DNA of 63,888 nt, filler included, from Octopus bimaculoides (Eukaryota), in the NCBI RefSeq assembly GCF_001194135.2. It is 4 parts of 4 records of this genome, joined end to end, with 100 filler letters (N's around TTAATTAATTAA, not from the genome) between each part and the next. Parts side by side here need not be neighbours in the genome. Positions count along the whole stretch, not along the records: positions 34,271 to 48,292 come from NC_068985.1; 3 more parts are not named here. One strand, given 5' to 3'. Within the stretch, counting starts at the first letter, position 1; the number at the start of each line of letters is the position of its first letter. Shown one piece after another: positions 16,568 through 48,292 of the stretch. Both the position numbers and the translations under genes were made by a program. Below the pieces are notes generated by a model. The model was not told the DNA's origin, made no database searches, and saw only the letters and a program-made list of their open reading frames with translations.

Positions 16568-17085
16568 TACATATAAGATAATAATTTATTTTCAAAAGCA
16601 CAAACGTTGATAGAACAGCAGAGACAGGATAAAATATCCATACAAGACGAAAAAATATGTCAGCAACCAGCCATGAGACTTGAACTCATATCCTTTTGAT
16701 TACCGGTCAAGTGTTTCTAAGGCAAACATTGGTTTGTTTACATTTATCGAAATAAACTTGCAGCCTTGCAGTGTTCTGCTCGGTAGCTTTATAATTTCTA
16801 AAATCTATCAGTGGATAGATTAGCTTCATTGTAAAACACTTGACCGTTAACCAAAGGGATGTGAGTTCAAGTTTCATGGCTAGCTGCTGACATATTTTGC
16901 CGATTTGTATAGCCAGTTACATGGACAGATATTTGTGAATGTGCATCAAATACAACCTAGCACCCTGTTGACTAAAAATATTGTTGAAAAATACCTAGGG
17001 ACGCTTGTTACATGAAACATTAATAGTAAAGAAGTCACTAATATATGAGCTTAATATAGCGGACTTAGACATTTTAATTAATATA

Positions 17086-34270: not shown

Positions 34271-34683
34271 TACATATATATATATATGTATATGTATATA
34301 TATATATGTATATATATATATATACATATATATATATACATATACATATATATATATATGTATCTCTTTTACTCTTTTACTCGTTTCTGTCATTTGACTG
34401 CGGCCATGCTGGAGCATCGCCTTTAGTCGAGAAAATCGACCCCAGGACTTATTCTTTGTAAGCCTAGTACTTATTCTATCGGTCTCTTTTTGCTAAACTG
34501 CTAAGTTACGGGGACGTAAACACACTAGCATCGGTTGTCAAGCAATGGTGGGGGGACAAACACAGTCACACAAACACACATACATATATATACATATATA
34601 CGACGGGCTTCTTTCAGTTTCCGTCTAACCACTGGGCCATTGCACCTCCACATATACATACATCTATACATACATACATACAA

Positions 34684-34718
<35 letters not shown>

Positions 34719-35793
34719 TATATGTATACATATATTTATATATATANNNNNNNNNNNNNNNNNNNNNNNNNNNNNNNNNNNNNNNNNNNNNNNNNNNNNN
34801 NNNNNNNNNNNNNNNNNNNNNNNNNNNNNNNNNNNNNNNNNNNNNNNNNNNNNNNNNNNNNNNNNNNNNNNNNNNNNNNNNNNNNNNNNNNNNNNNNNNN
34901 NNNNNNNNNNNNNNNNNNNNNNNNNNNNNNNNNNNNNNNNNNNNNNNNNNNNNNNNNNNNNNNNNNNNNNNNNNNNNNNNNNNNNNNNNNNNNNNNNNNN
35001 NNNNNNNNNNNNNNNNNNNNNNNNNNNNNNNNNNNNNNNNNNNNNNNNNNNNNNNNNNNNNNNNNNNNNNNNNNNNNNNNNNNNNNNNNNNNNNNNNNNN
35101 NNNNNNNNNNNNNNNNNNNNNNNNNNNNNNNNNNNNNNNNNNNNNNNNNNNNNNNNNNNNNNNNNNNNNNNNNNNNNNNNNNNNNNNNNNNNNNNNNNNN
35201 NNNNNNNNNNNNNNNNNNNNNNNNNNNNNNNNNNNNNNNNNNNNNNNNNNTATATATATATATATGACTGTCTATATGTCACTCCTAACGCCAACCACTC
35301 TGAGAGTGTAGTGGGTGCTTTTTACATGCCACCAGTACAGGGGCCAGAGGAGCAGTACATATATATATATACACATATATATGTATATATGTATTTATAT
35401 GTATGAATATATGTATGTATATATACATATATATATGATGGGCTTCCTTCAGTTTTCATCTAATAAATCCACTTGCAAAGCTTTAGTTGACTAGTGGCTA
35501 TAGTAGAAGACACTTGTCCATGGTGTCACACAGTGAGATTGAATCAAGAACCATGTGGGAAGCAAACTCCTTACCAAGCAGCTACACCTGCACCTCTATA
35601 AAAAGTTGAAGGCTGCCCATAGGACTCGATCTCATATCTCCTATAGAAATGACAGATGTTATACCATCGTACCAAAGTGGTTTGCTCATTCAAAGCCAAC
35701 CTGGACTAAGTAACAATAACAATAATAATAACAAAAATAAAATAAGAACAATGATGATGACACAATAGCACAGATAAGAAATTGATGTCTTAC

Positions 35794-35936
35794 CAATACT
35801 CCAGATATATGAGTACATTGAAGACTTTATCTCAGGTGTATCAAAGTCTAGATTGCAATATGACACAGCCAGCCGGGATGGCCCATCTGGATACCAGGTA
35901 ACAGAGGATGCTGTACGGTTGCGGTCATTTGGATCT
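35794..35936 (-). CDS. DNAI2: DNAI2 fourth coding exon (143 bp), start of WD40 region
   Basis: (R)DPNDRNRTASSVTWYPDGPSRLAVSYCNLDFDTPEIKSSMYSYIWSI, versus human [31 protein letters not shown]...SYIWDL. Acceptor CTCCTTTTCAG, donor TTG|GTAAGA, phase 2/1, joining in frame with the previous exon. Confidence 0.95.
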
Positions 35937-35999
35937 CTGAAAAGGAGAGAAAGATATAAAATATTTAGAGAACTTTTCCTTCATTGGACACTAAACTCC

Positions 36000-36544
36000 G
36001 CTTGCGAAGACCTGTTGTGGCAAGTGAAATCAAAATCGAAATCGAACTAAATTCGACGACTGGCACCCATGCCAACATCACTTTCATTGGACACTAAACT
36101 CGGTTTGCGAAGACCTGTTGGGGCAAGCGAAAGCAAAATCGTGATGGCACCTGTACCAGTGAAGTGCAAAGAGCACCGTCCGAGCGTGATCATTGCCAGA
36201 GCAGCTGTCTGGCTTCCATGCCGGTGGCACGTAAATAACACCATTTGAGCGTGATCGTTACCAGCGTCGCCTTCCTGGCACTTGTGCTGGTAGCACGTGT
36301 AAAGACATTCAAGCGAGATCGTTGCCAGTGCAACTGGACTGGCTCCTGTGCAGGTGACACATAAAATACACCATTTTTAGTGTGGTCGTTGCCAGTACCG
36401 CCTGACTGGCCTCTGTGCCGGTGGCATGTAAAAGCACCCATTACACTCTTGGAGTGATTGGCATTAGGAAGGGCATCCAGCTGGTTCACCAGTCCTCATT
36501 CAAATCGTCCAACCCATGCTAGCATGGAAACCAGACGTTAAACG

Positions 36545-36589
<45 letters not shown>

Positions 36590-36590
36590 T
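36000..36590 (+). mobile_element. Non-autonomous retroposon with internal ~50-bp subrepeats and (GAT)n tail
   Basis: GGTGGCACGTAAAAAGCACC subrepeats, GGAAGGGCATCCAGCTG, then CATGGAAA..GACGTTAAAC(GAT)n. Related copies lie at 23624-23978 (+), 24795-25030 (-) and 28605-28992 (-). Confidence 0.7.
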
Positions 36591-37550
36591 GGCCTTTGCT
36601 TCAATTAATTTTTAAAATAACAAAGAATATAGTAGAATAATTGTGTCATTAATATGTTAGTGTCTGGAACAAAATTAAGATGAAACTTTAATGAAAGGTT
36701 TTAATTTAGATCACTATAACAGGAAATTAGTATGGTGGAACCAGGAGTGGTCTGAAGCAGGTGGGTATCAAAAGGATTAAAAAGGGTTGACTAAGTCCAT
36801 GATCATCAATTCTCAATAAGTCTATTGCAGCACACTGTTATGTCACAAGCAGTATCTAGGTGTGCCATAATTTTGTTAAATATTATTTAAACCAATAAAA
36901 AAAATTGACACTAGTGCTTAAGTGTCTCAACAAATAAGTTATTCTTAATTTTGATATAGAAGCAGAAGTGGTTGTGTGGTTAGGAAGCTTGCTTCCCAAC
37001 CACATGGTCTTGGGTTCAGTCCCACTGTATGGCACCTTGGGCTAATGTCTCCTACTATAGCCTTGGACTGATCAAAACCTCATGTGTGGATGTAGTAGCT
37101 GGGAACTGAAAAAAATCCTTTATACATATATATATATATAACTGCAACTCCATCAGTTACAACAACATGGTTTCCAGTTGATCTGATCAATGGAACAGCC
37201 AGCTCATGAAATTAACATGAAATTAACATGCAAGTGACTGAGTACTCCACAGACACACATACCCTTAACATAGTTCTCAGGGAGATTCAGCGTGACAGAG
37301 AATGTGACAAAGCTGGCCCTTTAAAATACAGATACTACTCATTTTTGCCAGCTGAGTGAACTGGAGTAACATGAAATAAAGTGCTTTGCTCAAAGACACA
37401 GCACGCTGCCAGATATTGAACTCACGGCCTTACAATTATGATCCGAATACTCTAACCACTCAGCCACGCACCTCCAAAACAAATTTCACTGCAGTAGTTA
37501 CCATGAGAAAATTTCTCATATTGGCTTTTGGTACAAAATACATGCTTGTT

Positions 37551-37694
37551 TATATTGCTAACGGGGAGATAAATCCCTGCCATCTCCAGTACTGAGACCA
37601 CCAGATCATGTGATTTCAACCTTTCTTGATTTTGTCAATGGTGGACATTCAACTGCTAGAGATATCAGCAACTCATCTCCCCACCAGCAATATA
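37551..37694 (-). ncRNA. Candidate structured intronic hairpin RNA, copy 1
   Basis: The 24-bp outer stem (37551-37574 with 37671-37694) is fully paired on the minus strand (19 WC + 5 G.U). An inner stem pairs 37581-37589 with 37656-37664. Confidence 0.4.
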
Positions 37695-37907
37695 TAGAAT
37701 AATTACCTGAACAGGTGCTGGTTCCATGATTAGCCAGTGAGTTAGTTAAAAAATATACGTTAGCAGCAAAGGTAGTATTAATATCAGGAGGAAATATTTA
37801 TCCCCACTTAAACATGGATGTTCTGTTAGAACAAACTTTACAGATACCATGTAGATACCATGAGAGAAATGCTCATATCAGCTTTTGGTGCAAAAGGCAT
37901 GCCTGTT

Positions 37908-38051
37908 TATATCACTAGCAGGGAGATAAATCCCTTCCACCTCCAGCACCAACACCACCAGATCACATGATTTCAACCTTCCTTGGTTTTATCAATGATG
38001 GATGTTTGACCGCTAGAGATAGCAGCAATTCATTTCCCTGCCAGTGATATA
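37908..38051 (-). ncRNA. Candidate structured intronic hairpin RNA, copy 2
   Basis: The 24-bp outer stem (37908-37931 with 38028-38051) has 21 WC, 2 G.U and 1 A.C. A 12-bp inner stem (37937-37948 with 38011-38022) has 4 G.U. Confidence 0.4.
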
Positions 38052-38343
38052 TAGGAAATCAGTACCAGAACAGGTGGTGGTGTCACAATTAGCCAGTTAG
38101 TATGTTGAAAAATATTTATTAGCAACAGAGGAAGTATTAATACTAAGAGGGAATATCTATCCCTGCTTATACATGGATGGGAATGATGAAGAAAGAGAAG
38201 TAAGAGAAGAGCAAGTGGGTTTAGATATGTGATATCTGATACTAATTAAAGCAAAGATCACAAGGTTAGGGTAGCCAAGTAGCTTACATCAAAGTCACCA
38301 ACAAAAGAAAGAAACTAATTCAATGAAGCAAGCAAATATTTAC

Positions 38344-38462
38344 CTGAAAAGATTGACTGTTTTGGCAGATGGTGCTTCATCAGTGTCATGAATATCAACA
38401 TCTTTAAAATATTCTTCATAAATGTCAATAGCATTGTTCTGTTTGATACAGTGTTCCATAAC
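38344..38462 (-). CDS. DNAI2: DNAI2 third coding exon (119 bp)
   Basis: [39 protein letters not shown](R), versus human [19 protein letters not shown]...PSAKTINVFR. Acceptor TTGCTAG, donor CAG|GTAAAT, phase 0/2. This exon is absent from the supplied ORF track. Confidence 0.96.
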
Positions 38463-39478
38463 CTAGCAACAGGATGGTACAAGAAACATATCTGTATTTG
38501 TTCATTTCATGAGAATATTATAATGTGAAGAGGTGATTCCTCCCACTTCCTACACGATTACTTCTCTTGTCTGTCAACATCACACTGAGTTATCATTCAC
38601 ATTACTCTACCAGCCAAAACACAACTTGTCAAAGACTATATAAATCTAGAAAGAACAAAGTAAATCTCAGTCTCATAAAGGCAAGTAAACCAAAAATTTT
38701 GAAGTCACTGTCAACCTTTTCATTGTAAAAGTTAATAAATGTGTACTCTATTAAACTAAAAAGTATTGAGTAATCATACAGTTTGGTGTTGAAATATTTT
38801 TGTTTATATCATAAAAACACAAACACATATATACATATGTGTATATGTCAAGTAAGTTTTATCTTAATAATTTTGATGCACACTCTATACAATCTTTTTA
38901 CTCTTTTTCTCTCTCTTATTCTTTTACCTCCTCTTCTCCCACTATTCTATCCTATTACTCTGTAACTCTCTCTCCCTCACTCCTCCTTCCTTGCTCACAT
39001 GGCTCCCACGTCACCATCGGCCATCTTTCTTTCTTTCTCTCCATTGTAGCTGGAAAAAGGAAGATGTGTTCTTGTTTGTCTCCTGTCCTAGCTTGATTTA
39101 CACATTTGCCACCACAACCTCATTTAGGCTTAGCAGCCCTTCCTGTTTGTTTTCACTGACCTGTTTGCGTTACCAATTTTGACCCTCTGCAAAGTCCCAA
39201 ATTTTATTTAATTTGCTTTGCAGGAGCAACTGTCTTATCGAAAGCGTATATTGTTGATAAATTCTTGAAATATGAGACTAAAAAAGCAGCCAACTTATAA
39301 AATCTCTTTAGTCTGAATATCTTTAACTGCTCTCCCTATGTCCATACCTATTACCCCCTCTTTTCGGGTTACCTTTATTTTTTCCCTATCTGAAATTTTA
39401 ATCCCCTGTCTCTTTAAATGTATTTCTTATTATTTTCTATAAATTCTTATTATTTTGTTTTCTTATTTAGATATCCTT

Positions 39479-39775
39479 ACCTATTAACCTCTCACTCTTA
39501 TAAATTGTTTCCTTTCCTGTTCTTAAAAAGATATTTTTCAGTTACTTAAGTCTATGCGAGATGGTTATACTATATCCATATAAACATATAAATATTTGTG
39601 CATGTGTATATATGCATATATGCGTACAACCTATTAACCTCTTATCCGTTATAATTGTATTCTTCTTGTTCTTAAATAGATATTTTTCAGTTACATAAGT
39701 CTATGTGAGGTGGTTATATTATATCCATATAAACATATAAATATTTGTGTGTGTATATGTGCATGTGTGCACATA
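39479..39775. repeat. Tandem duplication, unit ~149 bp
   Basis: ACCTATTAACCTCT...GATATTTTTCAGTTAC.TAAGTCTATG...CATATAAATATTTGTG occurs twice in direct orientation. Confidence 0.85.
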
Positions 39776-39954
39776 TAAATGTGTGTGTGTATCTGTATAC
39801 ATCTTTTTTTTTTTTTTCTGATTCATAGCTTAAAATTAATATATAGATAGCATGTTTATCTTTCCAGTTATTCCATAAGTAAATGCCCTGAGCAACAACA
39901 TGAATTTCTTCCAGCTTCTTGCTCTGTTAAAATATTTGAGAAAAACTATATTAA

Positions 39955-40174
39955 CCCTTTCATTACCGTATTTATTTTAAGATGCTCTGTGTTTCTTTCA
40001 ATTACTTTAAATATAACAAAGAATTTAGTAAAATAACTTAGTTATCATTCAGCTAGTGTTAGGAACATAAATTGTGACTAAGGTTTGGTGGAAGATTTTA
40101 ATTCAAAACTTTTGAAAACAGGACATTTGTACTGAGAACCAGAGCCAGTTTCAGCCGGGTTGGTAATGAAAGGG
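39955..40174. mobile_element. piggyBac-type MITE
   Basis: Perfect 13-bp TIR CCCTTTCATTACC with TTAA on both sides. Confidence 0.92.
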
Positions 40175-40359
40175 TTAATGTGTCCAACTGGTTAAAATTC
40201 TATTTATTTATTTGTGCAGCTGAAGATAGCATGGCATTTAAATTGATGTAATGATTGCATTGTTCAATTAAATGGAGACACTTGAAACTGTCATACTGCA
40301 TTACTACTTGATATCCTGTTGGTTATTTTGATTTTATATATAAATATATATATTCTTTT

Positions 40360-40730
40360 TTTCATTTACTTGTGGCCATTCTGGAGCACCACCTTGAAGG
40401 GTTATAGTCGAAGAAATTGACACCAGGACTTATTCTTTGAAAGCCTAGTACTTATTCTATCAGTTCCTTTTGCCAAACCATTAAGTTACAAGGACATAAA
40501 CACACCAGCATCAGTTGTCAAGTGATGGTAGGGGAACAAACACAGACACACGCCCACAAACACATATATAAATATATATATGACGGGCTTCTTTCATTTC
40601 CGTCTAGCTAATCCACTTTCAGTTTCCATCTACCAATTCAGTATACCAAATCACAAGGCTTTGGTCAGCTCAAGATGCCATTCAGTGGGACTGAACCTGG
40701 AACCATGTGGTTCAGAAGCAAGCTTCTCAC
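40360..40730 (-). mobile_element. Family-A SINE in a DNAI2 intron
   Basis: GAAGAAATTGACACCAGGACTTATTCTTTG...GGGACTGAACCTGGAACCATGTGG matches family A reversed. Confidence 0.8.
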
Positions 40731-41100
40731 CACATAATTATGCCTATATATCTATGTATATAGGAAAAACAGTTAGTTTTTTCCTGTTGCAGGGTTGGGA
40801 TTCCTTCCCCATTTGCCAATTAGAACCATGCCAACAGCTTCATGAATCGTGATGGGCGGAACTGATGTAAGGGAGATAACCCTGTCCCACCTGAAACCCT
40901 ACCTGAAGGTATGGTGTTTTCCTCCCTCCAGGTAGAGAGTAGGGTTACACGTTACCATTATGGTAGACAGATTATGTGCCTCCTGTCATTTGAGTCTGTC
41001 GAGTAAGCTATACAACAAAGTGTTTTATTGGTGCAAAATTAATGGTCACTCTCTGACCGGTCATAAGAATCAACCTTCTAAATATATATACGTATGTATG

Positions 41101-41157
<57 letters not shown>

Positions 41158-41182
41158 TGCACACACACATATACACACATAT

Positions 41183-41490
41183 GTGAAGGCACATGGCTCA
41201 GTGGTTAGTGCATCAGGCTCACAATCATGAGGTAGTGAGTTCAATTCCTGGAACGGGCTGTATGTTATGTTCTTGAGCAAGATAATTTATATCACATTGT
41301 TCCAGTTCACTCAGCTGTAGCAGTGAGTTGCGACATCACTGGTGCCAAGTTGCATCAGCCTTTGCCTTTCCCTTGGACATCAGTAGCATGGAGAAGGGAG
41401 GCTGGTATGCATGGGTGACTGCTGGTCTTCCATACAACTTTGCCCGTACTTGCGTCTCAGAGGGGAACTTTCTAAGTGCATTAATGACTG
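41183..41490 (+). mobile_element. tRNA-derived SINE (family C)
   Basis: GGCACATGGCTCAGTGGTTAG A box, GAGTTCAATTCC B box and TTCTTGAGCAAG centre. Confidence 0.75.
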
Positions 41491-41646
41491 ACATGGGTCT
41501 TTATCCGTAATACATATGAACATGTTTCATTTGTAAATATGAGGTACATGATTGTACATGTAGGAGAAGCATGTAAGACATCTCCTATGAGAAATTCTTC
41601 AGACAGAAAATCAAATGATACAAAATTTACATTTGGATGATACATT

Positions 41647-41699
<53 letters not shown>

Positions 41700-42171
41700 A
41701 GCAATGTGTATAGCAAACAGGAGTCCAATAGATAGTTGGATGGGAAATTAAAGAACAAAATGCTGCCACTACTGTCACTATCATCATCATATTCATCATC
41801 TTCATTGTCGTCGTCGTCGTCATCATCATCATCATCATCATCATCCCCATCGACATCATCACCATCATCATCATCATCATTACCAGCAGCATCACCATCA
41901 TCAACATCATCTTTATACATGTCATTGTTTGCATTAATGTCTACCAGTGTTAACCAATATGTCACATGATATATCCCTTTGTTTATCAAAGCATAACATG
42001 ATGATTTCAGTAAAGACCCACTGATCAGATATGGATCTTGACTGAAATAAGTAACAGTATCAAAAGCACCTACTGAAAATTCTTGAACATAGTGCCCTAG
42101 AATTGGTAGTTAAATAATAAAAGGATAAAAATACAGTCAGTGTGAAAGACAATAAGTCAACTCATACATAC

Positions 42172-42333
42172 ACTTCCCATAGAAGTGATTGCCGTGATGT
42201 AGCCTTCATCCTTTTCCACCTTCTTTCTATACCGCATCACCTGCTCAACTTCCTGACAATTGACATCTTTTGGCCATCCACCTTCTTTGTGATTAATCCC
42301 GTGTACTTCATATTCATAGCTTTCAGTGTTTGT
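42172..42333 (-). CDS. DNAI2: DNAI2 second coding exon (162 bp)
   Basis: TNTESYEYEVHGINHKEGGWPKDVNCQEVEQVMRYRKKVEKDEGYITAITSMGS, containing the EGGWPKDV motif. Acceptor TATTGCAG, donor AGT|GTATGT, phase 0/0. Confidence 0.96.
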
Positions 42334-42881
42334 CTGCAATACAGGGAGAAAGAATAACAAACTTAATGTTCTTTTCTACACTAGACACAAGGCCTAAAAT
42401 TTTTGGAGAGGTGGGGCAATTGATTAGATCAACCCCAGTATGCAACTGGTACTTGATTTATCGGCCCCAAAAGGATGAAAGGCAAAGTCGACCTCAGCGG
42501 AATTTGAACTGAGAACATAAAGACAAATGAAATACCACTAAGCATTTCGCCCGGCATGCTAACGTTTCTGCCAGCTCGCCGCCTTATAACAACCTTAATG
42601 TTGGAAATTTGCTGAAGTTTTCAAGTTTCTGATATATCTATCTACATACCATTCAATGTGTAAACATTCATATCTAAAGGAATACAGAAACATTGCATGA
42701 AACATTGAAATCGTCATTGAATGGATGCATACAAATGGAGAGAAAAAAACAAGTGACAGTGATTTTGAAGTTTCACCTGTAACAGTTCATCAGACTCTAC
42801 GTCCATATCAAGTTAACCACTGTTTTTATTATTCCTTAAAAACACCAATATTAAATAAATAAATAAATTGCGTAATATTAT

Positions 42882-44088
42882 ATATAAAATCTTGCAGATA
42901 AATTGTGACAATTTTTACAATGCATAAAACTGGTCGTAAATACTAAAATAGTGGTAATAGACAGATATATGGCTGCCCTTTTGGGTAATAACTGCCTCTA
43001 TATGAGAACGAAATTTTTTGCAGCTGCTGCAACCTCCACTTTTTTGGTTTTGTGGGTTGCATGCATGATTCAGGTCTTCAAACTGTTGACACTTGAGTGT
43101 GGTGAAGCATTGGTCCTTGCTTGAAGTACACCCCATGAAAAGTAATCAAGAAGGTTGAGATCTGGGCTATTACTGGGCCAGATGTTGGCTCTCACAAAAA
43201 ATGGCACCTTCTCACCAAGGAAGGCCTGTGTTACTTTTGACCTGTGGTATGGTGCAGAATCTTGGATAAGCACCACATTGTCAAGCCCAAACTTCTGCTC
43301 TATCCAAGGTAACAGAGAGTTCTTCAGTATTTTCAGATACTCCTTTGTGTTGATCTTCAAGTCAGACTCAATGAAGTGTGGACTCATGACACTTCCAAAT
43401 ACCAACACAGAGGTAGGATTCTTAGTCTCGAACACAGGAGCAATGTCAGAAAAGTATGCAATCACTTGAGAATTTCTGCCATTCACCTCAGTGTCCACAG
43501 TGAACTTCTTCTCGTCCACAAACACAAGAGTTTTTCCTGCACTCTGACGCTTGATGAACGACAAGGTTTGGGCATCTCTTGGCTCTGATTGTTTTAGCCT
43601 TGGCTGTGTGTAGATGATGGTATCGTCAAACATAGCTAGTCATACTAAAGTTCCTATTCACAGCTCTGGACAGTGTGGAAAGAGACACATTGCATTTCTT
43701 TGCAAGAGTTGTCGTGGATGTGGATGGGCTGGCTTCAATCGAGCATTTGAGGTCAGCAAGAAACATTGGATTGCACCTGGAATCACTTTGAGTCTTTCTA
43801 TGAATCTTGCCCACTTCTTTAAATTATTTATACACATGATAAACTGTTGCTTTTGGAAGTTTCGCCAACTTAACAATTTTATTGGCAGTTGTGCCTAGTG
43901 TGTGCCAAAACAACAATGGTGGAATGATTCTGTTGTTCCATAACTTTCTGTTGTTGAATCAGTTCACTATTTACCTGAAAAATAAAGAGGAGGATTAAAT
44001 TTTCAAGCAGAGTTTTGTCCAAAAATGAAATATTAAACCCACTAAATTAACTGCTTAAAATTGATCTCAATTTATCTGCAAGACCATG

Positions 44089-44092
<4 letters not shown>
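42882..44092 (-). mobile_element. Near full-length maT (DD37D) transposon, frameshifted
   Basis: FVDEKKFTVD...QDSAPYH...WPSNSPDLNLLDY has 37 residues between the last two Asp. Inverted TCTTGCAGATAAATTG lies at ~42890 and ~44068-44083. Confidence 0.92.
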
Positions 44093-44123
<31 letters not shown>

Positions 44124-44377
44124 CATACAGGTTACACACACACACACACACACACATATATACATATATCGTTAAATGCTTTAAATGAGTAGTAGATGGA
44201 CAGCCGACAACTGATCAAGGGTTGTTCTTTATGTTACTTGTCTTGTTTTCCATTTGTTTCTCTCGTTGTTCACATACCCAAGTTTGTCTCCGTATTTCAT
44301 GTTGTTTACATTTTGTGACATCCTGTACCCATATATGCGTAACTATATACATATATATATATGTTTGTGTGTGTGTG

Positions 44378-44421
<44 letters not shown>

Positions 44422-45547
44422 NNNNNNNNNNNNNNNNNNNNNNNNNNNNNNNNNNNNNNNNNNNNNNNNNNNNNNNNNNNNNNNNNNNNNNNNNNNNNNN
44501 NNNNNNNNNNNNNNNNNNNNNNNNNNNNNNNNNNNNNNNNNNNNNNNNNNNNNNNNNNNNNNNNNNNNNNNNNNNNNNNNNNNNNNNNNNNNNNNNNNNN
44601 NNNNNNNNNNNNNNNNNNNNNNNNNNNNNNNNNNNNNNNNNNNNNNNNNNNNNNNNNNNNNNNNNNNNNNNNNNNNNNNNNNNNNNNNNNNNNNNNNNNN
44701 NNNNNNNNNNNNNNNNNNNNNNNNNNNNNNNNNNNNNNNNNNNNNNNNNNNNNNNNNNNNNNNNNNNNNNNNNNNNNNNNNNNNNNNNNNNNNNNNNNNN
44801 NNNNNNNNNNNNNNNNNNNNNNNNNNNNNNNNNNNNNNNNNNNNNNNNNNNNNNNNNNNNNNNNNNNNNNNNNNNNNNNNNNNNNNNNNNNNNNNNNNNN
44901 NNNNNNNNNNNNNNNNNNNNNNNNNNNNNNNNNNNNNNNNNNNNNNNNNNNNNNNNNNNNNNNNNNNNNNNNNNNNNNNNNNNNNNNNNNNNNNNNNNNN
45001 NNNNNNNNNNNNNNNNNNNNNNNNNNNNNNNNNNNNNNNNNNNNNNNNNNNNNNNNNNNNNNNNNNNNNNNNNNNNNNNNNNNNNNNNNNNNNNNNNNNN
45101 NNNNNNNNNNNNNNNNNNNNNNNNNNNNNNNNNNNNNNNNNNNNNNNNNNNNNNNNNNNNNNNNNNNNNNNNNNNNNNNNNNNNNNNNNNNNNNNNNNNN
45201 NNNNNNNNNNNNNNNTATATATATATATATATATATATATCAGTGAATAGTGTAAACATTAGCAAGGTAGCCAACAAAATCCAGCACTTTCAAATAAAAT
45301 TACTCAGTATATAGTAGTATTTGAACTGCAACGTCAGACAATCACCTGTTACTCTCTGTATTAAAAATCCAATGAGCCAACGCTTACTCCCTTAAAAACC
45401 TGTAAACAACACAATTGCTCTCTAATTGCAATATCATTGTATTGCTGTGTTGACCAAACTGTTGAATGTTGTTATACATCACTGGTCACAATGCACTTCC
45501 TTGCAGTGTTGTAGCTTTTGAATGACGCTACCCCATTGGCTAGAGAG

Positions 45548-46170
45548 GTGGAGGCACATGGCTTAGTGGTTAGTGTGTTGAACTCATGATTATAAGATTG
45601 TGGTTTTGATTCCTTGACTGGGCAACACATTGTGTTCTTGAGCAAAATACTTCATACCACGTTGCTCTAGTCCACTCAGATGGCAAAAATGGAGAATTTA
45701 TAAGCCATAGAAACCAGGAAATTGTCCCTTATGAGTTGGCATTGTGGAGGCATGTGGCTTAGAGGTTAAGATGTTGGAATGATGATTGTAAGATTGTCGT
45801 TTCAATTCTGGAACTGTGTGATGCATTGTGTTCTTGAGCAAGGCACTTCATTTCATGTTTATCCAGTCCACTCAGCTGGCAAAAATGAGTACTCCTGTGA
45901 TGAACAGACATCCCATCCAGGTGGAGAATTTATAAGCTATGGAAACCGAAAGCCAGGCCTTATGAATCGGTATCGTGGAGGCGAGTGACTTAGTAGTTAG
46001 GGTGTTGGAATTATGATCATAAGATTGTGGTTTCGATTCCTGGACCAGGCAATGTGTTATGTTCTTGAGCAAAACACTTAATTTCACATTGCTCAGCTGT
46101 CAAAAGTGAGTAATCCTGTGACTGACTGGCATCCCGTTCAGGAGGGGAATTTATACATGATGGACTCTAA
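45548..46170 (+). mobile_element. Tandem trimer of family-C SINE units
   Basis: GGAGGC..TGGCTTAGTGGTTAG heads at ~45548, ~45746 and ~45977, each followed by TGTGTTCTTGAGCAA. Confidence 0.8.
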
Positions 46171-46367
46171 TGAGTCAGTATGATCTTTTTACTTTACTGG
46201 CTAGAGAGATAGGTAAGATAATATTCCCGCTGAAAAGAATGCCAGTCTATTTACACCTGAGTGGGTTGGAGTAATGTGAAATGAAATGTTTTGCTCTGGA
46301 ACACAAGGCACCACTTTTCTGAAAATTGAAACCACAACTTTGCGATTGTGAGTGTAACACCCTAACC

Positions 46368-46662
46368 CAGGGGTTTTCAAACTTTTTGACTTGCAGACCC
46401 CTTTATGTTTCAGGCTTTACCTTAGGGACCCCCTTATAAACGCTTATGAAATTTATACATAAATATTTGCTTAAAATAACATATATTTTTACATTTATTT
46501 ATTTAACAGTATTTAACAAATAGGTTTATTGTCAATTAAAAGATTTCGATTAAAAAACATATAAAATCAAATTGCCCATAAAAAGTATTTGCTGTCCACG
46601 GACCCCCTGTCTTGTCCTTGCAGACCCCCTGTGGTCCGCGGACCACAGTTTGAAAACCCCTG
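46368..46662. mobile_element. hAT MITE inserted in a SINE, in the first DNAI2 coding-region intron
   Basis: Perfect 16-bp TIR CAGGGGTTTTCAAACT and perfect 8-bp TSD CCCTAACC (46360-46367 and 46663-46670). Confidence 0.93.
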
Positions 46663-46755
46663 CCCTAACCTCTAGGCTACATGCCTTCACACATGCAATA
46701 TAAGATACAATAGATAAGTTGGTAGAAATGGAGTGTAAAATAAATATTATCTCAC

Positions 46756-46938
46756 GGTGTGCTCGGACATTTCAGGGACACATTGTATACCCCTGTGAAC
46801 AGGATCCCGCTCAATGAAATCAACTAATTTACTTGGATCAGGTTCTATGTCCACATGAAGCTCTGCAGCACGATCTGTGAAGTTACATTGTCGTCCAAAT
46901 TCAGCTCGTTTCTTAACATACACATAAACAATATCCAT
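46756..46938 (-). CDS. DNAI2: Axonemal dynein intermediate chain 2, first coding exon (61 codons)
   Basis: Translates [61 protein letters not shown], matching the human DNAI2 N-terminus as recalled ([27 protein letters not shown]...). Phase-0 donor ACC|GTGAGA. An acceptor TTTCTTTAG lies 18 nt upstream of the ATG (exon starts 46956), implying a 5' UTR exon further upstream. Confidence 0.96.
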
Positions 46939-47104
46939 CGTTGGTGTGGATAAATTCTAAAGAAATGATAAACCATAATAATTAGCATTATACAGAAATT
47001 AAAATGCTGAAAAAGGGACAATTATACCAAATAAAATAAAAGATTATCTATCAGTATTGAAAGTTTATCTGTTGTGTCTTCAAACATTGCAATTTATTCT
47101 TTTA

Positions 47105-47354
47105 TTTTTTTTTTATTTGTTTCAGTCATTTGACTGCAACCATGCAGGAGCACCGCCTTCAAGGATATTTTAGTTGAAGAAATCGACCCCAGGACTTATT
47201 ATTTGTAAGCCTAGTACTTATTCTATAAGTCTCTTTTAACTGGGACGTAAACACATCAATATCAGTTGTCAAGCGATTGTGGTGGGACAAACACAGACAC
47301 ACAGATATACACACACACATGCGCGCCTACACACACACACATACACACACATGA

Positions 47355-47393
<39 letters not shown>

Positions 47394-47510
47394 CACACAC
47401 TATAGGCTTCTTTCAGTTTCTGTCTACCAAGGTCCCATGTAGTAGGACTGAACCTGGAATCATGTGGTTGAGAAGCAAGCTTCTTACTACATGGCCACAC
47501 CTGTGCCTAG
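47105..47510 (-). mobile_element. Family-A SINE upstream of the first DNAI2 coding exon
   Basis: TTTCAGTCATTTGACTGCAACCATGC...GAAATCGACCCCAGGACTTATT...GAAGCAAGCTTCTTAC. Confidence 0.85.
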
Positions 47511-48292
47511 ACAAATGTTTTCTAAAATTTGCACACATATCCAAAACCATTCAGGAATTATGTGTGAATCATGTGGTATGACGTCAGTGTCTGGGGAAAC
47601 TGACCGGAAGGGCGAGTCGACCGGAAGGGGAAACAGGGCAGAGGGAGCCNNNNNNNNNNNNNNNNNNNNNNNNNNNNNNNNNNNNNNNNNNNNNNNNNNN
47701 NNNNNNNNNNNNNNNNNNNNNNNNNNNNNNNNNNNNNNNNNNNNNNNNNATATATATATACACACAAGACAATTGATGGTATGTCAAGTATTGTTCAACA
47801 AAGATTCCAGATTTATTAAAATTATCTAGACCTCTAGAGGATGTATCATAATACTAATCCACTGGAACAAGGGAGATAATCTCAAGATCCTAGACCTCCA
47901 AAATTGACTTGTTATTAAGGAGGACATCCTTATTGTCCAGAGATACATGTATAGTCATATATACATATGTATCACACACACATACGTGTATTTATGTATG
48001 CATATGCATGAAAAACTGAAAAATCAGTAGAAGCACAACATATACTTAGTTTCTGTTGATACTTGACAATATAGCTTAGTTTGTGTGCATGTGCTGCTAT
48101 AAGAATATATATACTTCTTAACGTATCAGTTGCGTTTAGATAACCTGCTACAAAAAGCAATAGTACGAAAGTGTATAACAGCTGCGACCATCTAGTCAAT
48201 AATATATACATGTATGTATGCATGTATGTATGTATGTATATATACATATATATATACACGCACACACATATATATATGTGTGTATATATATA

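What the first reader, a model, noticed from the sequence alone, without database searches (positions are those of the whole stretch)
37497..38180. Tandem pair of covarying long hairpins in a DNAI2 intron, paired preferentially on the sense strand
Seen: a ~357-bp unit is duplicated ~290 nt downstream of the third coding exon, and each copy holds a ~145-nt foldback. Outer-stem positions 6, 7 and 13 differ between the copies in both arms at once (TTG/CAA versus TCA/TGA, and G:C versus A:T), so pairing is kept. Of 14 arm differences in the stems I aligned, 13 are G.U on the minus (DNAI2) strand and one is A.C. About 10 are independent and 9 of those favour minus (roughly p~0.01 under 50:50, with a hand-chosen register). 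The inverted repeat at 16640-16910 splits 4:4 by comparison. Both copies also keep two small 3' hairpins (ATGAG/CTCAT and TTTTG/CAAAA). Inference: a functional intronic structured RNA, such as a miRNA or hairpin-siRNA precursor pair or an ADAR substrate. Known: coleoid cephalopods have extensive A-to-I editing and many lineage-specific miRNAs. Alternatives: a Helitron or MITE tandem, arm gene conversion, a retrocopied hyper-edited RNA, or strand-biased mutation.
Basis: partly seen in the sequence, partly recalled or inferred. Interest (0 to 1): 0.78.

Follow-up and report, generated by a model that had tools for sequence, protein, structure and literature searches.

The report
Tandem foldback repeats in DNAI2 intron
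Two adjacent copies of a ~145-base palindromic repeat in an intron of an axonemal dynein gene would fold into long RNA hairpins, better on the gene's own strand, but the "covariation" is what CpG decay produces in a palindrome and a related species shows no extra conservation, so this is most likely an ordinary intronic repeat, not a new RNA gene.

Summary
A 357-nt segment is tandemly duplicated (37494-37850 and 37851-38180, 80% identical), starting 158 nt downstream of DNAI2 exon 3. Each copy holds a ~145-nt foldback. Both foldbacks fold much better on the minus (sense) strand: -63.0 vs -47.1 and -70.7 vs -44.2 kcal/mol.

I count five compensatory pairs, not three. All five lie at TG/CA versus CA/TG dinucleotides, which is the signature of a CpG facing a CpG in a palindrome. 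The related species still has CG at one of these sites, and local CpG o/e is 0.37. Neutral CpG decay gives complementary outcomes half the time, so 5/5 has p≈0.03.

The G.U strand bias holds (11:2 independent events, p≈0.01-0.05). Strand-biased mutation does not explain it: local controls give 28:23.

The case for function is weak. The part of the copy nearest the exon that can be seen in a related species is no better conserved than flanking intron, and homology ends inside the hairpin. There is no Rfam match. The stem is too long for a canonical miRNA. Molluscs are reported to lack endo-siRNAs.

Best reading: a neutral intronic palindrome that was duplicated locally and is passively double-stranded in the pre-mRNA, so a likely ADAR substrate. 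Genome copy number could not be tested.

The parts
37851..38180 (-). Unit 2, the copy of the 357-nt tandem duplication nearest the exon
   Evidence: Direct repeats D1/D2. BLAST 79.9% over 329 nt to unit 1. Orthologous to L005 613-772.
37494..37850 (-). Unit 1, the copy farther from the exon. It includes a 30-nt junction segment (37821-37850) whose first 11 nt repeat the end of unit 2.
37908..38051 (-). Foldback of unit 2. Lower stem of 39 pairs plus an upper stem, 61 pairs in the minimum-free-energy fold (9 of them G.U). RNA -70.7 kcal/mol on minus vs -44.2 on plus.
37551..37694 (-). Foldback of unit 1. 55 pairs in the minimum-free-energy fold (9 of them G.U). RNA -63.0 kcal/mol on minus vs -47.1 on plus.
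38034..38034 (-). The only A.C mismatch in either 39-bp lower stem; its partner is C at 37925. It arose by a G>A change specific to unit 2 (unit 1 and L005 both have G).
38039..38046 (-). 5' arm (sense orientation) of unit 2 carrying two decayed CpG sites, CA at 38046-45 and CA at 38040-39. Partners are TG at 37913-14 and 37919-20. Unit 1 has TG at the same places (37689-88, 37683-82), with CA at 37556-57 and an intact CG at 37562-63.
   Evidence: L005 keeps CG at the first site. CpG o/e 0.37.
37503..37538 (-). Two small hairpins at the 3' end of unit 1 in sense orientation: ATGAG/CTCAT and TTTTG/CAAAA. Unit 2 has the same pair at 37860-37895.
   Evidence: Read. Inverted BLAST hit. Helices 11-12.
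38338..38462 (-). DNAI2 coding exon 3 ([19 protein letters not shown]...NLFR), the host-gene context
37141..37485 (-). SINE-like repeat directly abutting the end of the duplication. It has a second copy in opposite orientation at about 41184-41317.
   Evidence: I13, I23. Boundary read.

Best explanation
This is an old, degenerate ~145-bp palindrome in DNAI2 intron 3. It arose either as a foldback or MITE-like insertion or as a spontaneous inverted duplication. A local 357-bp tandem duplication then copied it, one of several two-copy tandem duplications in this stretch.

The duplication predates the split from the related species seen in the Logan sequencing runs. Since then both copies have drifted at about the neutral intron rate. 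Methylation-driven CpG decay at CpG:CpG sites of the palindrome produced the TG/CA versus CA/TG 'compensatory' differences.

Because the gene is transcribed, each copy forms an imperfect duplex of 55-61 bp in the pre-mRNA. That duplex is probably edited passively by ADAR and then removed with the intron. No dedicated product or regulatory role is needed.

The excess of G.U on the sense strand is a chance fluctuation, or at most weak selection or inheritance from the source element.

Shown: the anatomy, the age relative to the species split, the CpG context, the lack of extra conservation, and the lack of strand-biased mutation. Inferred: neutrality, the origin, and ADAR editing.
For: - It is a simple duplication. 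There are two copies only, 80% identical, and no third copy in the flanks or elsewhere in the 14-kb piece.
- Three other two-copy tandem duplications lie within 2.5 kb.
- The duplication is older than the species split. L005 matches unit 2 at 82% but unit 1 at 72%.
- There is no extra constraint. Window-to-L005 identity is 80-86% inside the unit, 86-90% in flanking intron and 92% in exon 3. L005 also has a 29-nt deletion at the unit's start. Between the two copies, stem divergence is 16.7% and non-stem 20.8%, with ts:tv 11:2 vs 35:17; neither difference is significant.
- All five double changes are TG/CA versus CA/TG. L005 retains CG at site 17-18. The piece has CpG o/e 0.37 and TG and CA o/e about 1.36.
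- No Rfam family matches within the unit at E<=1.
- Outside the foldback the consensus structure is weak, -10 kcal/mol.
- In octopus most A-to-I editing lies in intronic and 3'UTR hairpins (PMC9699675).
Against: - The G.U versus A.C split (9:1 or 11:2) is nominally significant: p=0.011 against 50:50, 0.026 against the local control rate, and Fisher 0.046 one-sided against SINE pairs. No mutational bias explains it.
- All five fully decayed CpG site pairs ended complementary, which has p≈0.03 under independent decay.
- Both lower stems have kept 36-37 of 39 pairs on the sense strand for longer than the species divergence. Under a uniform neutral model this has P=0.02-0.07.
- Genome copy number, expression, small RNAs and editing could not be examined.
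- Only one partial orthologue was available.
Confidence: 0.58

Rival explanations
1. The hairpins are a selected, sense-strand structured RNA. They would act in the DNAI2 pre-mRNA or as an excised product: a lineage-specific non-canonical miRNA-like precursor pair, an ADAR-recruiting or sponging duplex, or a structure that modulates splicing of intron 3. Selection at the RNA level would keep pairing through G.U intermediates.
For: - The sense strand folds 16-26 kcal/mol better in both copies. The consensus fold is -79.8 vs -58.2 kcal/mol.
- G.U:A.C is 11:2 without local mutational asymmetry.
- All five completed CpG decays are complementary.
- Both copies have kept pairing since before the species split.
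- The tandem arrangement in sense orientation resembles an intronic miRNA cluster.
Against: - There is no elevated conservation in the related species, and the hairpin's homology is interrupted there. The L005 region folds no better than shuffles, z -0.78.
- No Rfam match and no k-mer match in the held supplements of the octopus miRNA catalogue paper (those files are truncated).
- A continuous stem of 55-61 bp differs from the ~35-bp stem of animal pri-miRNAs (own knowledge).
- Between the copies, neither arm is conserved like a mature miRNA; the arms are 83% identical.
- Molluscs are reported to lack endo-siRNAs (PMC12479628).
- The p-values are about 0.01-0.05, taken after the locus was picked for this very feature.
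Confidence: 0.14
2. The foldback, or the whole 357-nt unit, belongs to a dispersed mobile-element family whose hairpin works on one strand only. Candidates are a rolling-circle or ssDNA element or a retroelement tail. The G.U-rich strand would be inherited from the family consensus rather than selected at this locus.
For: - The intron is packed with repeats. Two SINE families recur in the piece, and a DDE_3 transposase fragment lies at 43070-43633.
- The palindrome has TA-rich ends compatible with a TA target duplication (read).
- Five of the G.U pairs are shared by both copies, so they predate the duplication.
- The asymmetry persists, more weakly, with DNA parameters: -26.2/-22.4 and -27.1/-18.2 kcal/mol.
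Against: - No other copy is found in the 14-kb piece or in 26 kb of fetched loci, while the SINE families recur 2-3 times in the same space.
- The unit ends do not fit Helitron termini (no 5'-TC, 3' end CTAC rather than CTRR, AT-rich 5-bp hairpin; read).
- There is no similarity to the neighbouring DDE_3 element.
- The TA 'duplication' is ambiguous, because the palindrome itself ends in TATATA.
- Copy number could not be measured.
Confidence: 0.2
3. The arms are kept complementary by DNA-level arm-to-arm correction, meaning intrastrand template switching or gene conversion within the quasi-palindrome, with no RNA function.
For: - All five double changes restore Watson-Crick pairs.
- Neighbouring sites 17-18 and 23-24 changed in the same direction within each copy, as a single short conversion tract would produce.
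- Quasi-palindrome correction is an established mutational mechanism (own knowledge).
Against: - It does not explain why the uncorrected sites are G.U on one strand.
- 8 and 6 G.U pairs persist uncorrected in the lower stems.
- CpG decay alone already gives complementary outcomes half the time.
Confidence: 0.05
4. The sense-strand G.U excess comes from strand-biased mutation (transcription-associated C>T and A>G on the sense strand) or from a retrocopy of a hyper-edited RNA.
For: - DNAI2 is expected to be transcribed in the male germ line (own knowledge).
- One SINE pair splits 14:6 toward the sense strand.
Against: - Sense-strand G+T is 0.506 over 12.6 kb.
- Polarised substitutions are 8:8 in the L005 lineage and 2:4 in unit 2.
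- Pooled SINE controls give 28:23, p=0.58.
- A/G-type and C/T-type differences between the copies are balanced, 22 vs 24, with no one-directional A>G cluster.
Confidence: 0.03

Closest known systems
MITE-derived intronic hairpins, e.g. human Made1 elements that gave rise to hsa-mir-548 (PMC1784062, listed)
   Same: A short, almost fully palindromic element inside a gene, transcribed with its host, that folds into a long near-perfect hairpin.
   Different: No evidence here of a dispersed family, target-site duplication or small RNAs. The stem (55-61 bp) is longer than the Made1 hairpin. The two copies come from a local tandem duplication, not from two insertions.
Intronic inverted-repeat ADAR substrates (primate inverted Alu pairs; intronic and 3'UTR hairpins that carry most octopus A-to-I editing, PMC9699675)
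   Same: A long imperfect intramolecular duplex in a pre-mRNA, with one A.C mismatch of the kind ADAR prefers (own knowledge).
   Different: The arms belong to one short palindrome rather than two separate repeat insertions. Editing was not measured.
Drosophila hpRNA endo-siRNA loci
   Same: Long hairpins, sometimes tandemly duplicated, with strand-specific G.U pairs.
   Different: Those stems run to hundreds of bp and need a dedicated siRNA Dicer/Ago pathway, which a survey of 32 molluscs did not find (PMC12479628).
Canonical intronic miRNA clusters
   Same: Two sense-oriented hairpins about 357 nt apart in one intron.
   Different: The stem is nearly twice the canonical length. Neither arm is conserved like a mature miRNA between the copies. 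There is no Rfam match.

Membership tests
Canonical animal miRNA precursor | Hairpin with a ~35-bp stem (about three helical turns), single-stranded basal flanks and an apical loop | tested here: not met
   The stems have 55 and 61 pairs running almost continuously to a 6-nt loop.
Canonical animal miRNA precursor | A mature arm far more conserved than the loop and flanks among paralogues and orthologues | tested here: not met
   Stem divergence between the copies is 16.7% vs 20.8% outside the stem, not significant. L005 5'-arm identity is 86% vs 86-90% in flanking intron.
Canonical animal miRNA precursor | ~22-nt reads from both arms with 2-nt 3' overhangs | not testable with these tools
   No small-RNA data. 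No k-mer match in the held, truncated supplements of PMC9699675.
Canonical animal miRNA precursor | Match to a curated family model | tested here: not met
   cmscan at E<=1 gave no hit in 37494-38180. All hits in the piece fall on TA/CA microsatellites.
hpRNA / endo-siRNA precursor | A long perfect or near-perfect intramolecular duplex | tested here: met
   The 39-pair lower stem has 2-3 unpaired positions on the sense strand.
hpRNA / endo-siRNA precursor | The host clade has a dedicated siRNA Dicer/Ago pathway and detectable endo-siRNAs | tested here: not met
Literature only: reported absent across molluscs, including O. bimaculoides (PMC12479628).
MITE | Terminal inverted repeats and small size | tested here: met
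   144-nt palindrome with arms of 44 and 40 nt at 73% and 78% complementarity in a gapless comparison. This holds trivially for any foldback.
MITE | Target-site duplication flanking the inverted repeats | tested here: inconclusive
   A TA/TA reading is possible, but the palindrome itself ends in TATATA, so it carries no information (read).
MITE | Many dispersed copies in the genome | not testable with these tools
   No eukaryotic genome collection was available. There is no other copy in the 14-kb piece plus 26 kb of loci. The protein-based proxy failed its own positive control.
Helitron / Helentron tandem | 5'-TC and 3'-CTRR termini, with a short GC-rich hairpin about 10 nt before the 3' end | tested here: not met
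   The units end in CTAC and the next unit starts ATGG. The subterminal hairpin is an AT-rich 5-bp stem (read).
ADAR substrate | An intramolecular duplex of about 30 bp or more in a transcribed region | tested here: met
   Sense-strand duplex of 55-61 bp inside DNAI2 intron 3.
ADAR substrate | Clustered A-to-G mismatches between RNA and genome | not testable with these tools
   No RNA-seq data.
Structured RNA supported by covariation | Compensatory changes in excess of a phylogeny- and context-aware null | tested here: inconclusive
   There are 5 double changes against 0-1 in slid controls, and P=0.003-0.009 under a uniform model for the three lower-stem pairs. But all five are at decayed CpG:CpG sites, where P is about 1/2 each and 0.03 jointly. 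Only two full sequences are available.

The most novel reading that the evidence does not exclude
The two hairpins are a young, lineage-restricted RNA element selected on the sense strand and hosted in a cilia/sperm dynein gene. It could be a non-canonical long-stem miRNA-like pair or an ADAR-binding duplex that tunes processing of the DNAI2 pre-mRNA. Pairing would have been held through G.U intermediates since before the split from the related species.
Probability: 0.12. Interest if true: 0.6.

Novelty: new member of a known kind. Interest (0 to 1): 0.2.

Why it matters
If the hairpins were selected, they would be an example of a structured intronic RNA born from a palindromic repeat in a coleoid. 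That would bear on how these animals gained so many lineage-specific miRNAs and editing substrates.

The main value of this check is methodological. In a CpG-depleted (methylated) genome, a palindrome with CpG opposite CpG yields 'compensatory' TG/CA versus CA/TG differences between copies with probability 1/2. Two-sequence covariation in inverted repeats must therefore be judged against a dinucleotide-context null. The remaining G.U strand bias is modest and cheap to test with public octopod genomes and RNA-seq.

Tried and rejected
1. Copy number by protein proxy.
- A six-frame translation of the unit against 5.8 billion proteins gave no hit.
- A window ORF spanning the neighbouring SINE plus the unit, searched against 1.84 billion representatives, gave one spurious hit to an unrelated repeat protein.
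- Even the high-copy SINE is invisible to this method, so the null says nothing about copy number.

2. An exact two-block DNA pattern of the foldback in JGI metagenome contigs gave 0 matches, as expected for animal DNA.

3. Exact look-ups of the exon 3 ORF and the 187-aa DDE_3 ORF found nothing on record. The source genome is not in the collection.

4. More distant DNAI2 loci were uninformative. L006 aligns only in exon 3. L007, a 68-kb ENA contig, has a compact gene and no homologue of the unit.

5. The species behind runs SRR11869384/85/90/94 could not be identified from the literature.

6. A possible third, degenerate arm copy near the unit's start (GTGGGGA in unit 1, GCAGGGA in unit 2) has only marginal similarity (p=0.017 and 0.12). 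I dropped it as evidence.

7. A hammerhead or other ribozyme 'retrozyme' reading of the tandem units has no Rfam support.

8. Strand-biased mutation and a hyper-edited retrocopy were tested and disfavoured.

9. Structure outside the foldback, using three sequences, is weak: -10 kcal/mol.
Full report
**Where it is.** The piece (34271-48292) carries the first three coding exons of an axonemal dynein intermediate chain 2 (DNAI2) homologue on the minus strand: exon 1 at 46747-46938, exon 2 within 42157-42360, and exon 3 at 38338-38462. The joined exon peptides match proteins named dynein axonemal intermediate chain 2 at up to 69% identity over their full length. The source genome is not in the protein or contig collection.

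**The repeat.** Two direct-repeat blocks with 357/359-nt spacing and a BLAST alignment of 79.9% over 329 nt confirm the tandem pair: 37494-37850 (unit 1) and 37851-38180 (unit 2).
- Read on the gene's strand, unit 2 begins 158 nt after the exon 3 donor site.
- The periodicity continues about 16 nt past unit 1 until a SINE-like repeat starts at 37485 (read).
- No further copy is detectable on either side, elsewhere in the piece, or in 26 kb of fetched loci.
- The anatomy is one simple duplication of a 357-bp segment. Three other two-copy tandem duplications lie nearby: 39479-39764, 35971-36150 and 36312-36442. This kind of event is common in these introns.

**The hairpins.** Each unit contains an inverted repeat. 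As sense-strand RNA it folds into one long hairpin of 55 pairs (unit 1) or 61 pairs (unit 2) closed by a 6-nt loop.

| 144-nt core | Minus strand, RNA | Plus strand, RNA | Minus, DNA | Plus, DNA |
|---|---|---|---|---|
| Unit 1 (37551-37694) | -63.0 kcal/mol (z -8.0) | -47.1 (z -5.7) | -26.2 | -22.4 |
| Unit 2 (37908-38051) | -70.7 kcal/mol (z -9.4) | -44.2 (z -6.9) | -27.1 | -18.2 |

RNA values are and DNA values. Whole units show the same ordering, as do the consensus folds, -79.8 vs -58.2 kcal/mol. The sense-strand preference is real.

**Pair-by-pair check.** The lower stem has no bulges, so a fixed register covers 39 pairs.
- G.U pairs shared by both copies: positions 21, 32, 36, 42, 48.
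- G.U in unit 1 only: 22, 23, 34. G.U in unit 2 only: 44.
- That is 9 independent G.U events against 1 A.C (binomial 0.011 one-sided, 0.021 two-sided). A gapped arm alignment that reaches the upper stem gives 11:2.
- Unpaired cells in the lower stem number 2 and 3 on minus, 10 and 8 on plus.
Two more such pairs lie in the upper stem.
- Slid-partner controls give 0-1 such pairs against 5 observed.

**Why the covariation is weaker than it looks.** At all five compensatory pairs, unit 1 reads TG in the 5' arm and CA in the 3' arm, and unit 2 reads CA and TG.
- This is the pattern expected when a CpG in one arm faces a CpG in the other and each decays by deamination to TG or CA.
- At site 17-18 the related species still has CG. 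At site 23-24 unit 1 still has CG in its 3' arm.
- The piece has CpG o/e 0.37 and TG and CA o/e about 1.36, so CpG transitions dominate here.
- Once both CpGs of a site have decayed, the result is complementary with probability 1/2, a double G.U with 1/4, and a double A.C with 1/4 (inference).
- Five completed sites that are all complementary therefore have p≈0.03. A uniform-rate simulation gave 0.003-0.009 for the three lower-stem pairs.
- Arm-to-arm templated correction would also produce them.

**Is the G.U bias mutational?** It is not.
- Sense-strand G+T is 0.506 over 12.6 kb, while the hairpin cores reach 0.55-0.56 with GC skew +0.21 to +0.26.
- With unit 1 as outgroup, sense-strand C>T plus A>G versus G>A plus T>C is 8:8 in the L005 lineage and 2:4 in unit 2.
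- Three inverted SINE pairs in the same gene split 4:5, 10:12 and 14:6, pooled 28:23.
- Against that control the foldback's 11:2 gives p=0.026 (binomial) or 0.046 (Fisher, one-sided).
- A/G-type and C/T-type differences between the units are balanced at 22 vs 24. That rules out a hyper-edited retrocopy.
- The bias therefore stands unexplained at p≈0.01-0.05, measured after the locus was chosen for it.

**Comparison with a related species.** Exon-sized ORFs led to roughly 1-kb Logan contigs from four runs of one unnamed related species.
- L005 covers exon 3 and 578 nt downstream. It aligns to window 38811-38012 at 82%, and to unit 1 at only 72%. It is therefore the orthologue of unit 2, and the duplication predates the species split.
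- Identity without gaps is 86-90% in the ordinary intron, 92% in exon 3 and 80-86% inside the unit. There is a 29-nt deletion at the unit's start.
- Homology ends in the upper stem of the hairpin. What follows is 280 nt of GC- and CpG-rich sequence containing a G10 run.
- L005 700-1051 folds no better than shuffles, z -0.78.
- This tail may be a recent insertion or an assembly join, and the contig then ends, so the 3' arm cannot be seen.
- The visible part gives no sign of constraint. That argues against function, though one partial sequence is not decisive.

**Known families.**
- Rfam has nothing in the unit at E<=1. The piece's mir-297/466-type hits all fall on TA/CA microsatellites.
- ARAGORN finds no tRNA.
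- The stem is almost twice the canonical pri-miRNA length, and neither arm is conserved like a mature miRNA between the copies.
- The held supplements of the octopus miRNA catalogue paper contain none of six diagnostic k-mers, but those files are truncated.
- A survey of 32 molluscs found no siRNA-class Dicer or Ago and no endo-siRNAs (PMC12479628). This weighs against the hairpin-siRNA reading.
- In octopus most A-to-I editing lies in intronic and 3'UTR hairpins (PMC9699675). Passive editing of these duplexes is therefore the default expectation.
- Helitron termini are absent, and a TA target duplication cannot be distinguished from the palindrome's own TATATA ends (read).

**What could not be done.** No eukaryotic genome collection was available, so genome copy number is untested. 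My protein-based proxy failed its positive control. The only indirect hint is that two SINE families recur 2-3 times within the piece while the foldback does not.

**Verdict.** The feature is real and was described accurately. The most likely account (about 0.58) is a neutral intronic palindrome, copied by a local tandem duplication, that is passively double-stranded in the pre-mRNA. A selected sense-strand RNA keeps about 0.14, resting on the G.U bias and the persistence of pairing. A mobile-element family with a strand-specific hairpin keeps about 0.2. Interest is low to moderate. The most useful result is the CpG-decay caveat for covariation arguments in inverted repeats.

Noticed in passing
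window 37698-37714 (unit 1), 38057-38073 (unit 2), 38335-38351 (exon 3 donor): Just 5' of each hairpin on the sense strand lies a motif resembling a 5' splice site. Unit 1 has CTGTTCAG|GTAATTATT, which matches the real exon 3 donor CTTTTCAG|GTAAATATT at 15 of 17 positions. Unit 2's version is degenerate. A UACUAAC-like branch-point motif (CATACTAAC in unit 2) lies about 40 nt upstream. This may be chance, or a decoy or cryptic splice signal.
   Followed up: partly
window 37141-37485 (-), about 41184-41317 (+); 35496-35558, 36984-37110, 40667-40726: Two SINE-like repeat families recur in both orientations within the DNAI2 introns. They form long-range inverted pairs of 74-85% complementarity, 1.4-3.8 kb apart. 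I used them as local controls for strand asymmetry.
   Followed up: partly
window 43070-43633 (-): A 187-aa ORF in intron 1 matches Pfam DDE_3 (E 5e-7, just above the gathering score). It is a Tc1/mariner-type transposase remnant. L001-L004 from the related species align across part of this region at about 76%.
   Followed up: partly
window 39479-39764; 35971-36150; 36312-36442: Three further two-copy tandem duplications (periods 149, 103 and 67 nt; 72-91% identity) lie in the same introns. Local duplication is frequent here.
   Followed up: no
L005 772-1051: The related-species contig switches from AT-rich intron to GC- and CpG-rich sequence with a G10 run, exactly inside the hairpin's upper stem. 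This could be a young insertion, a polymorphism or an assembly chimera.
   Followed up: partly
window 41780-41911 and 36547-36589: A long imperfect (ATC)n/(GAT)n microsatellite opens a 113-aa Asp-rich ORF on the minus strand in intron 2. It looks like a repeat artefact, not an exon.
   Followed up: no
window about 34745-35250, 44422-45215, about 47650-47750: Runs of N (assembly gaps) inside the piece, each flanked by TA/CA/TG microsatellites.
   Followed up: no
window 48201-48292, 41074-41226, 35355-35445, 34276-34365: Sub-threshold Rfam hits to mir-297, mir-466, mir-1277 and mir-3149 on both strands all coincide with TA/CA microsatellites. They are artefacts of low-complexity sequence.
   Followed up: yes
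window 37807-37813 / 38165-38171, compared with the 5' arms at 37679-37685 / 38036-38042: A short motif near each unit's start (GTGGGGA in unit 1, GCAGGGA in unit 2) carries the same copy-specific TG/CA difference as the hairpin's 5' arm. This hints at a third degenerate arm copy or at homogenisation within the unit. The similarity is only marginally significant (p=0.017 and 0.12).
   Followed up: partly
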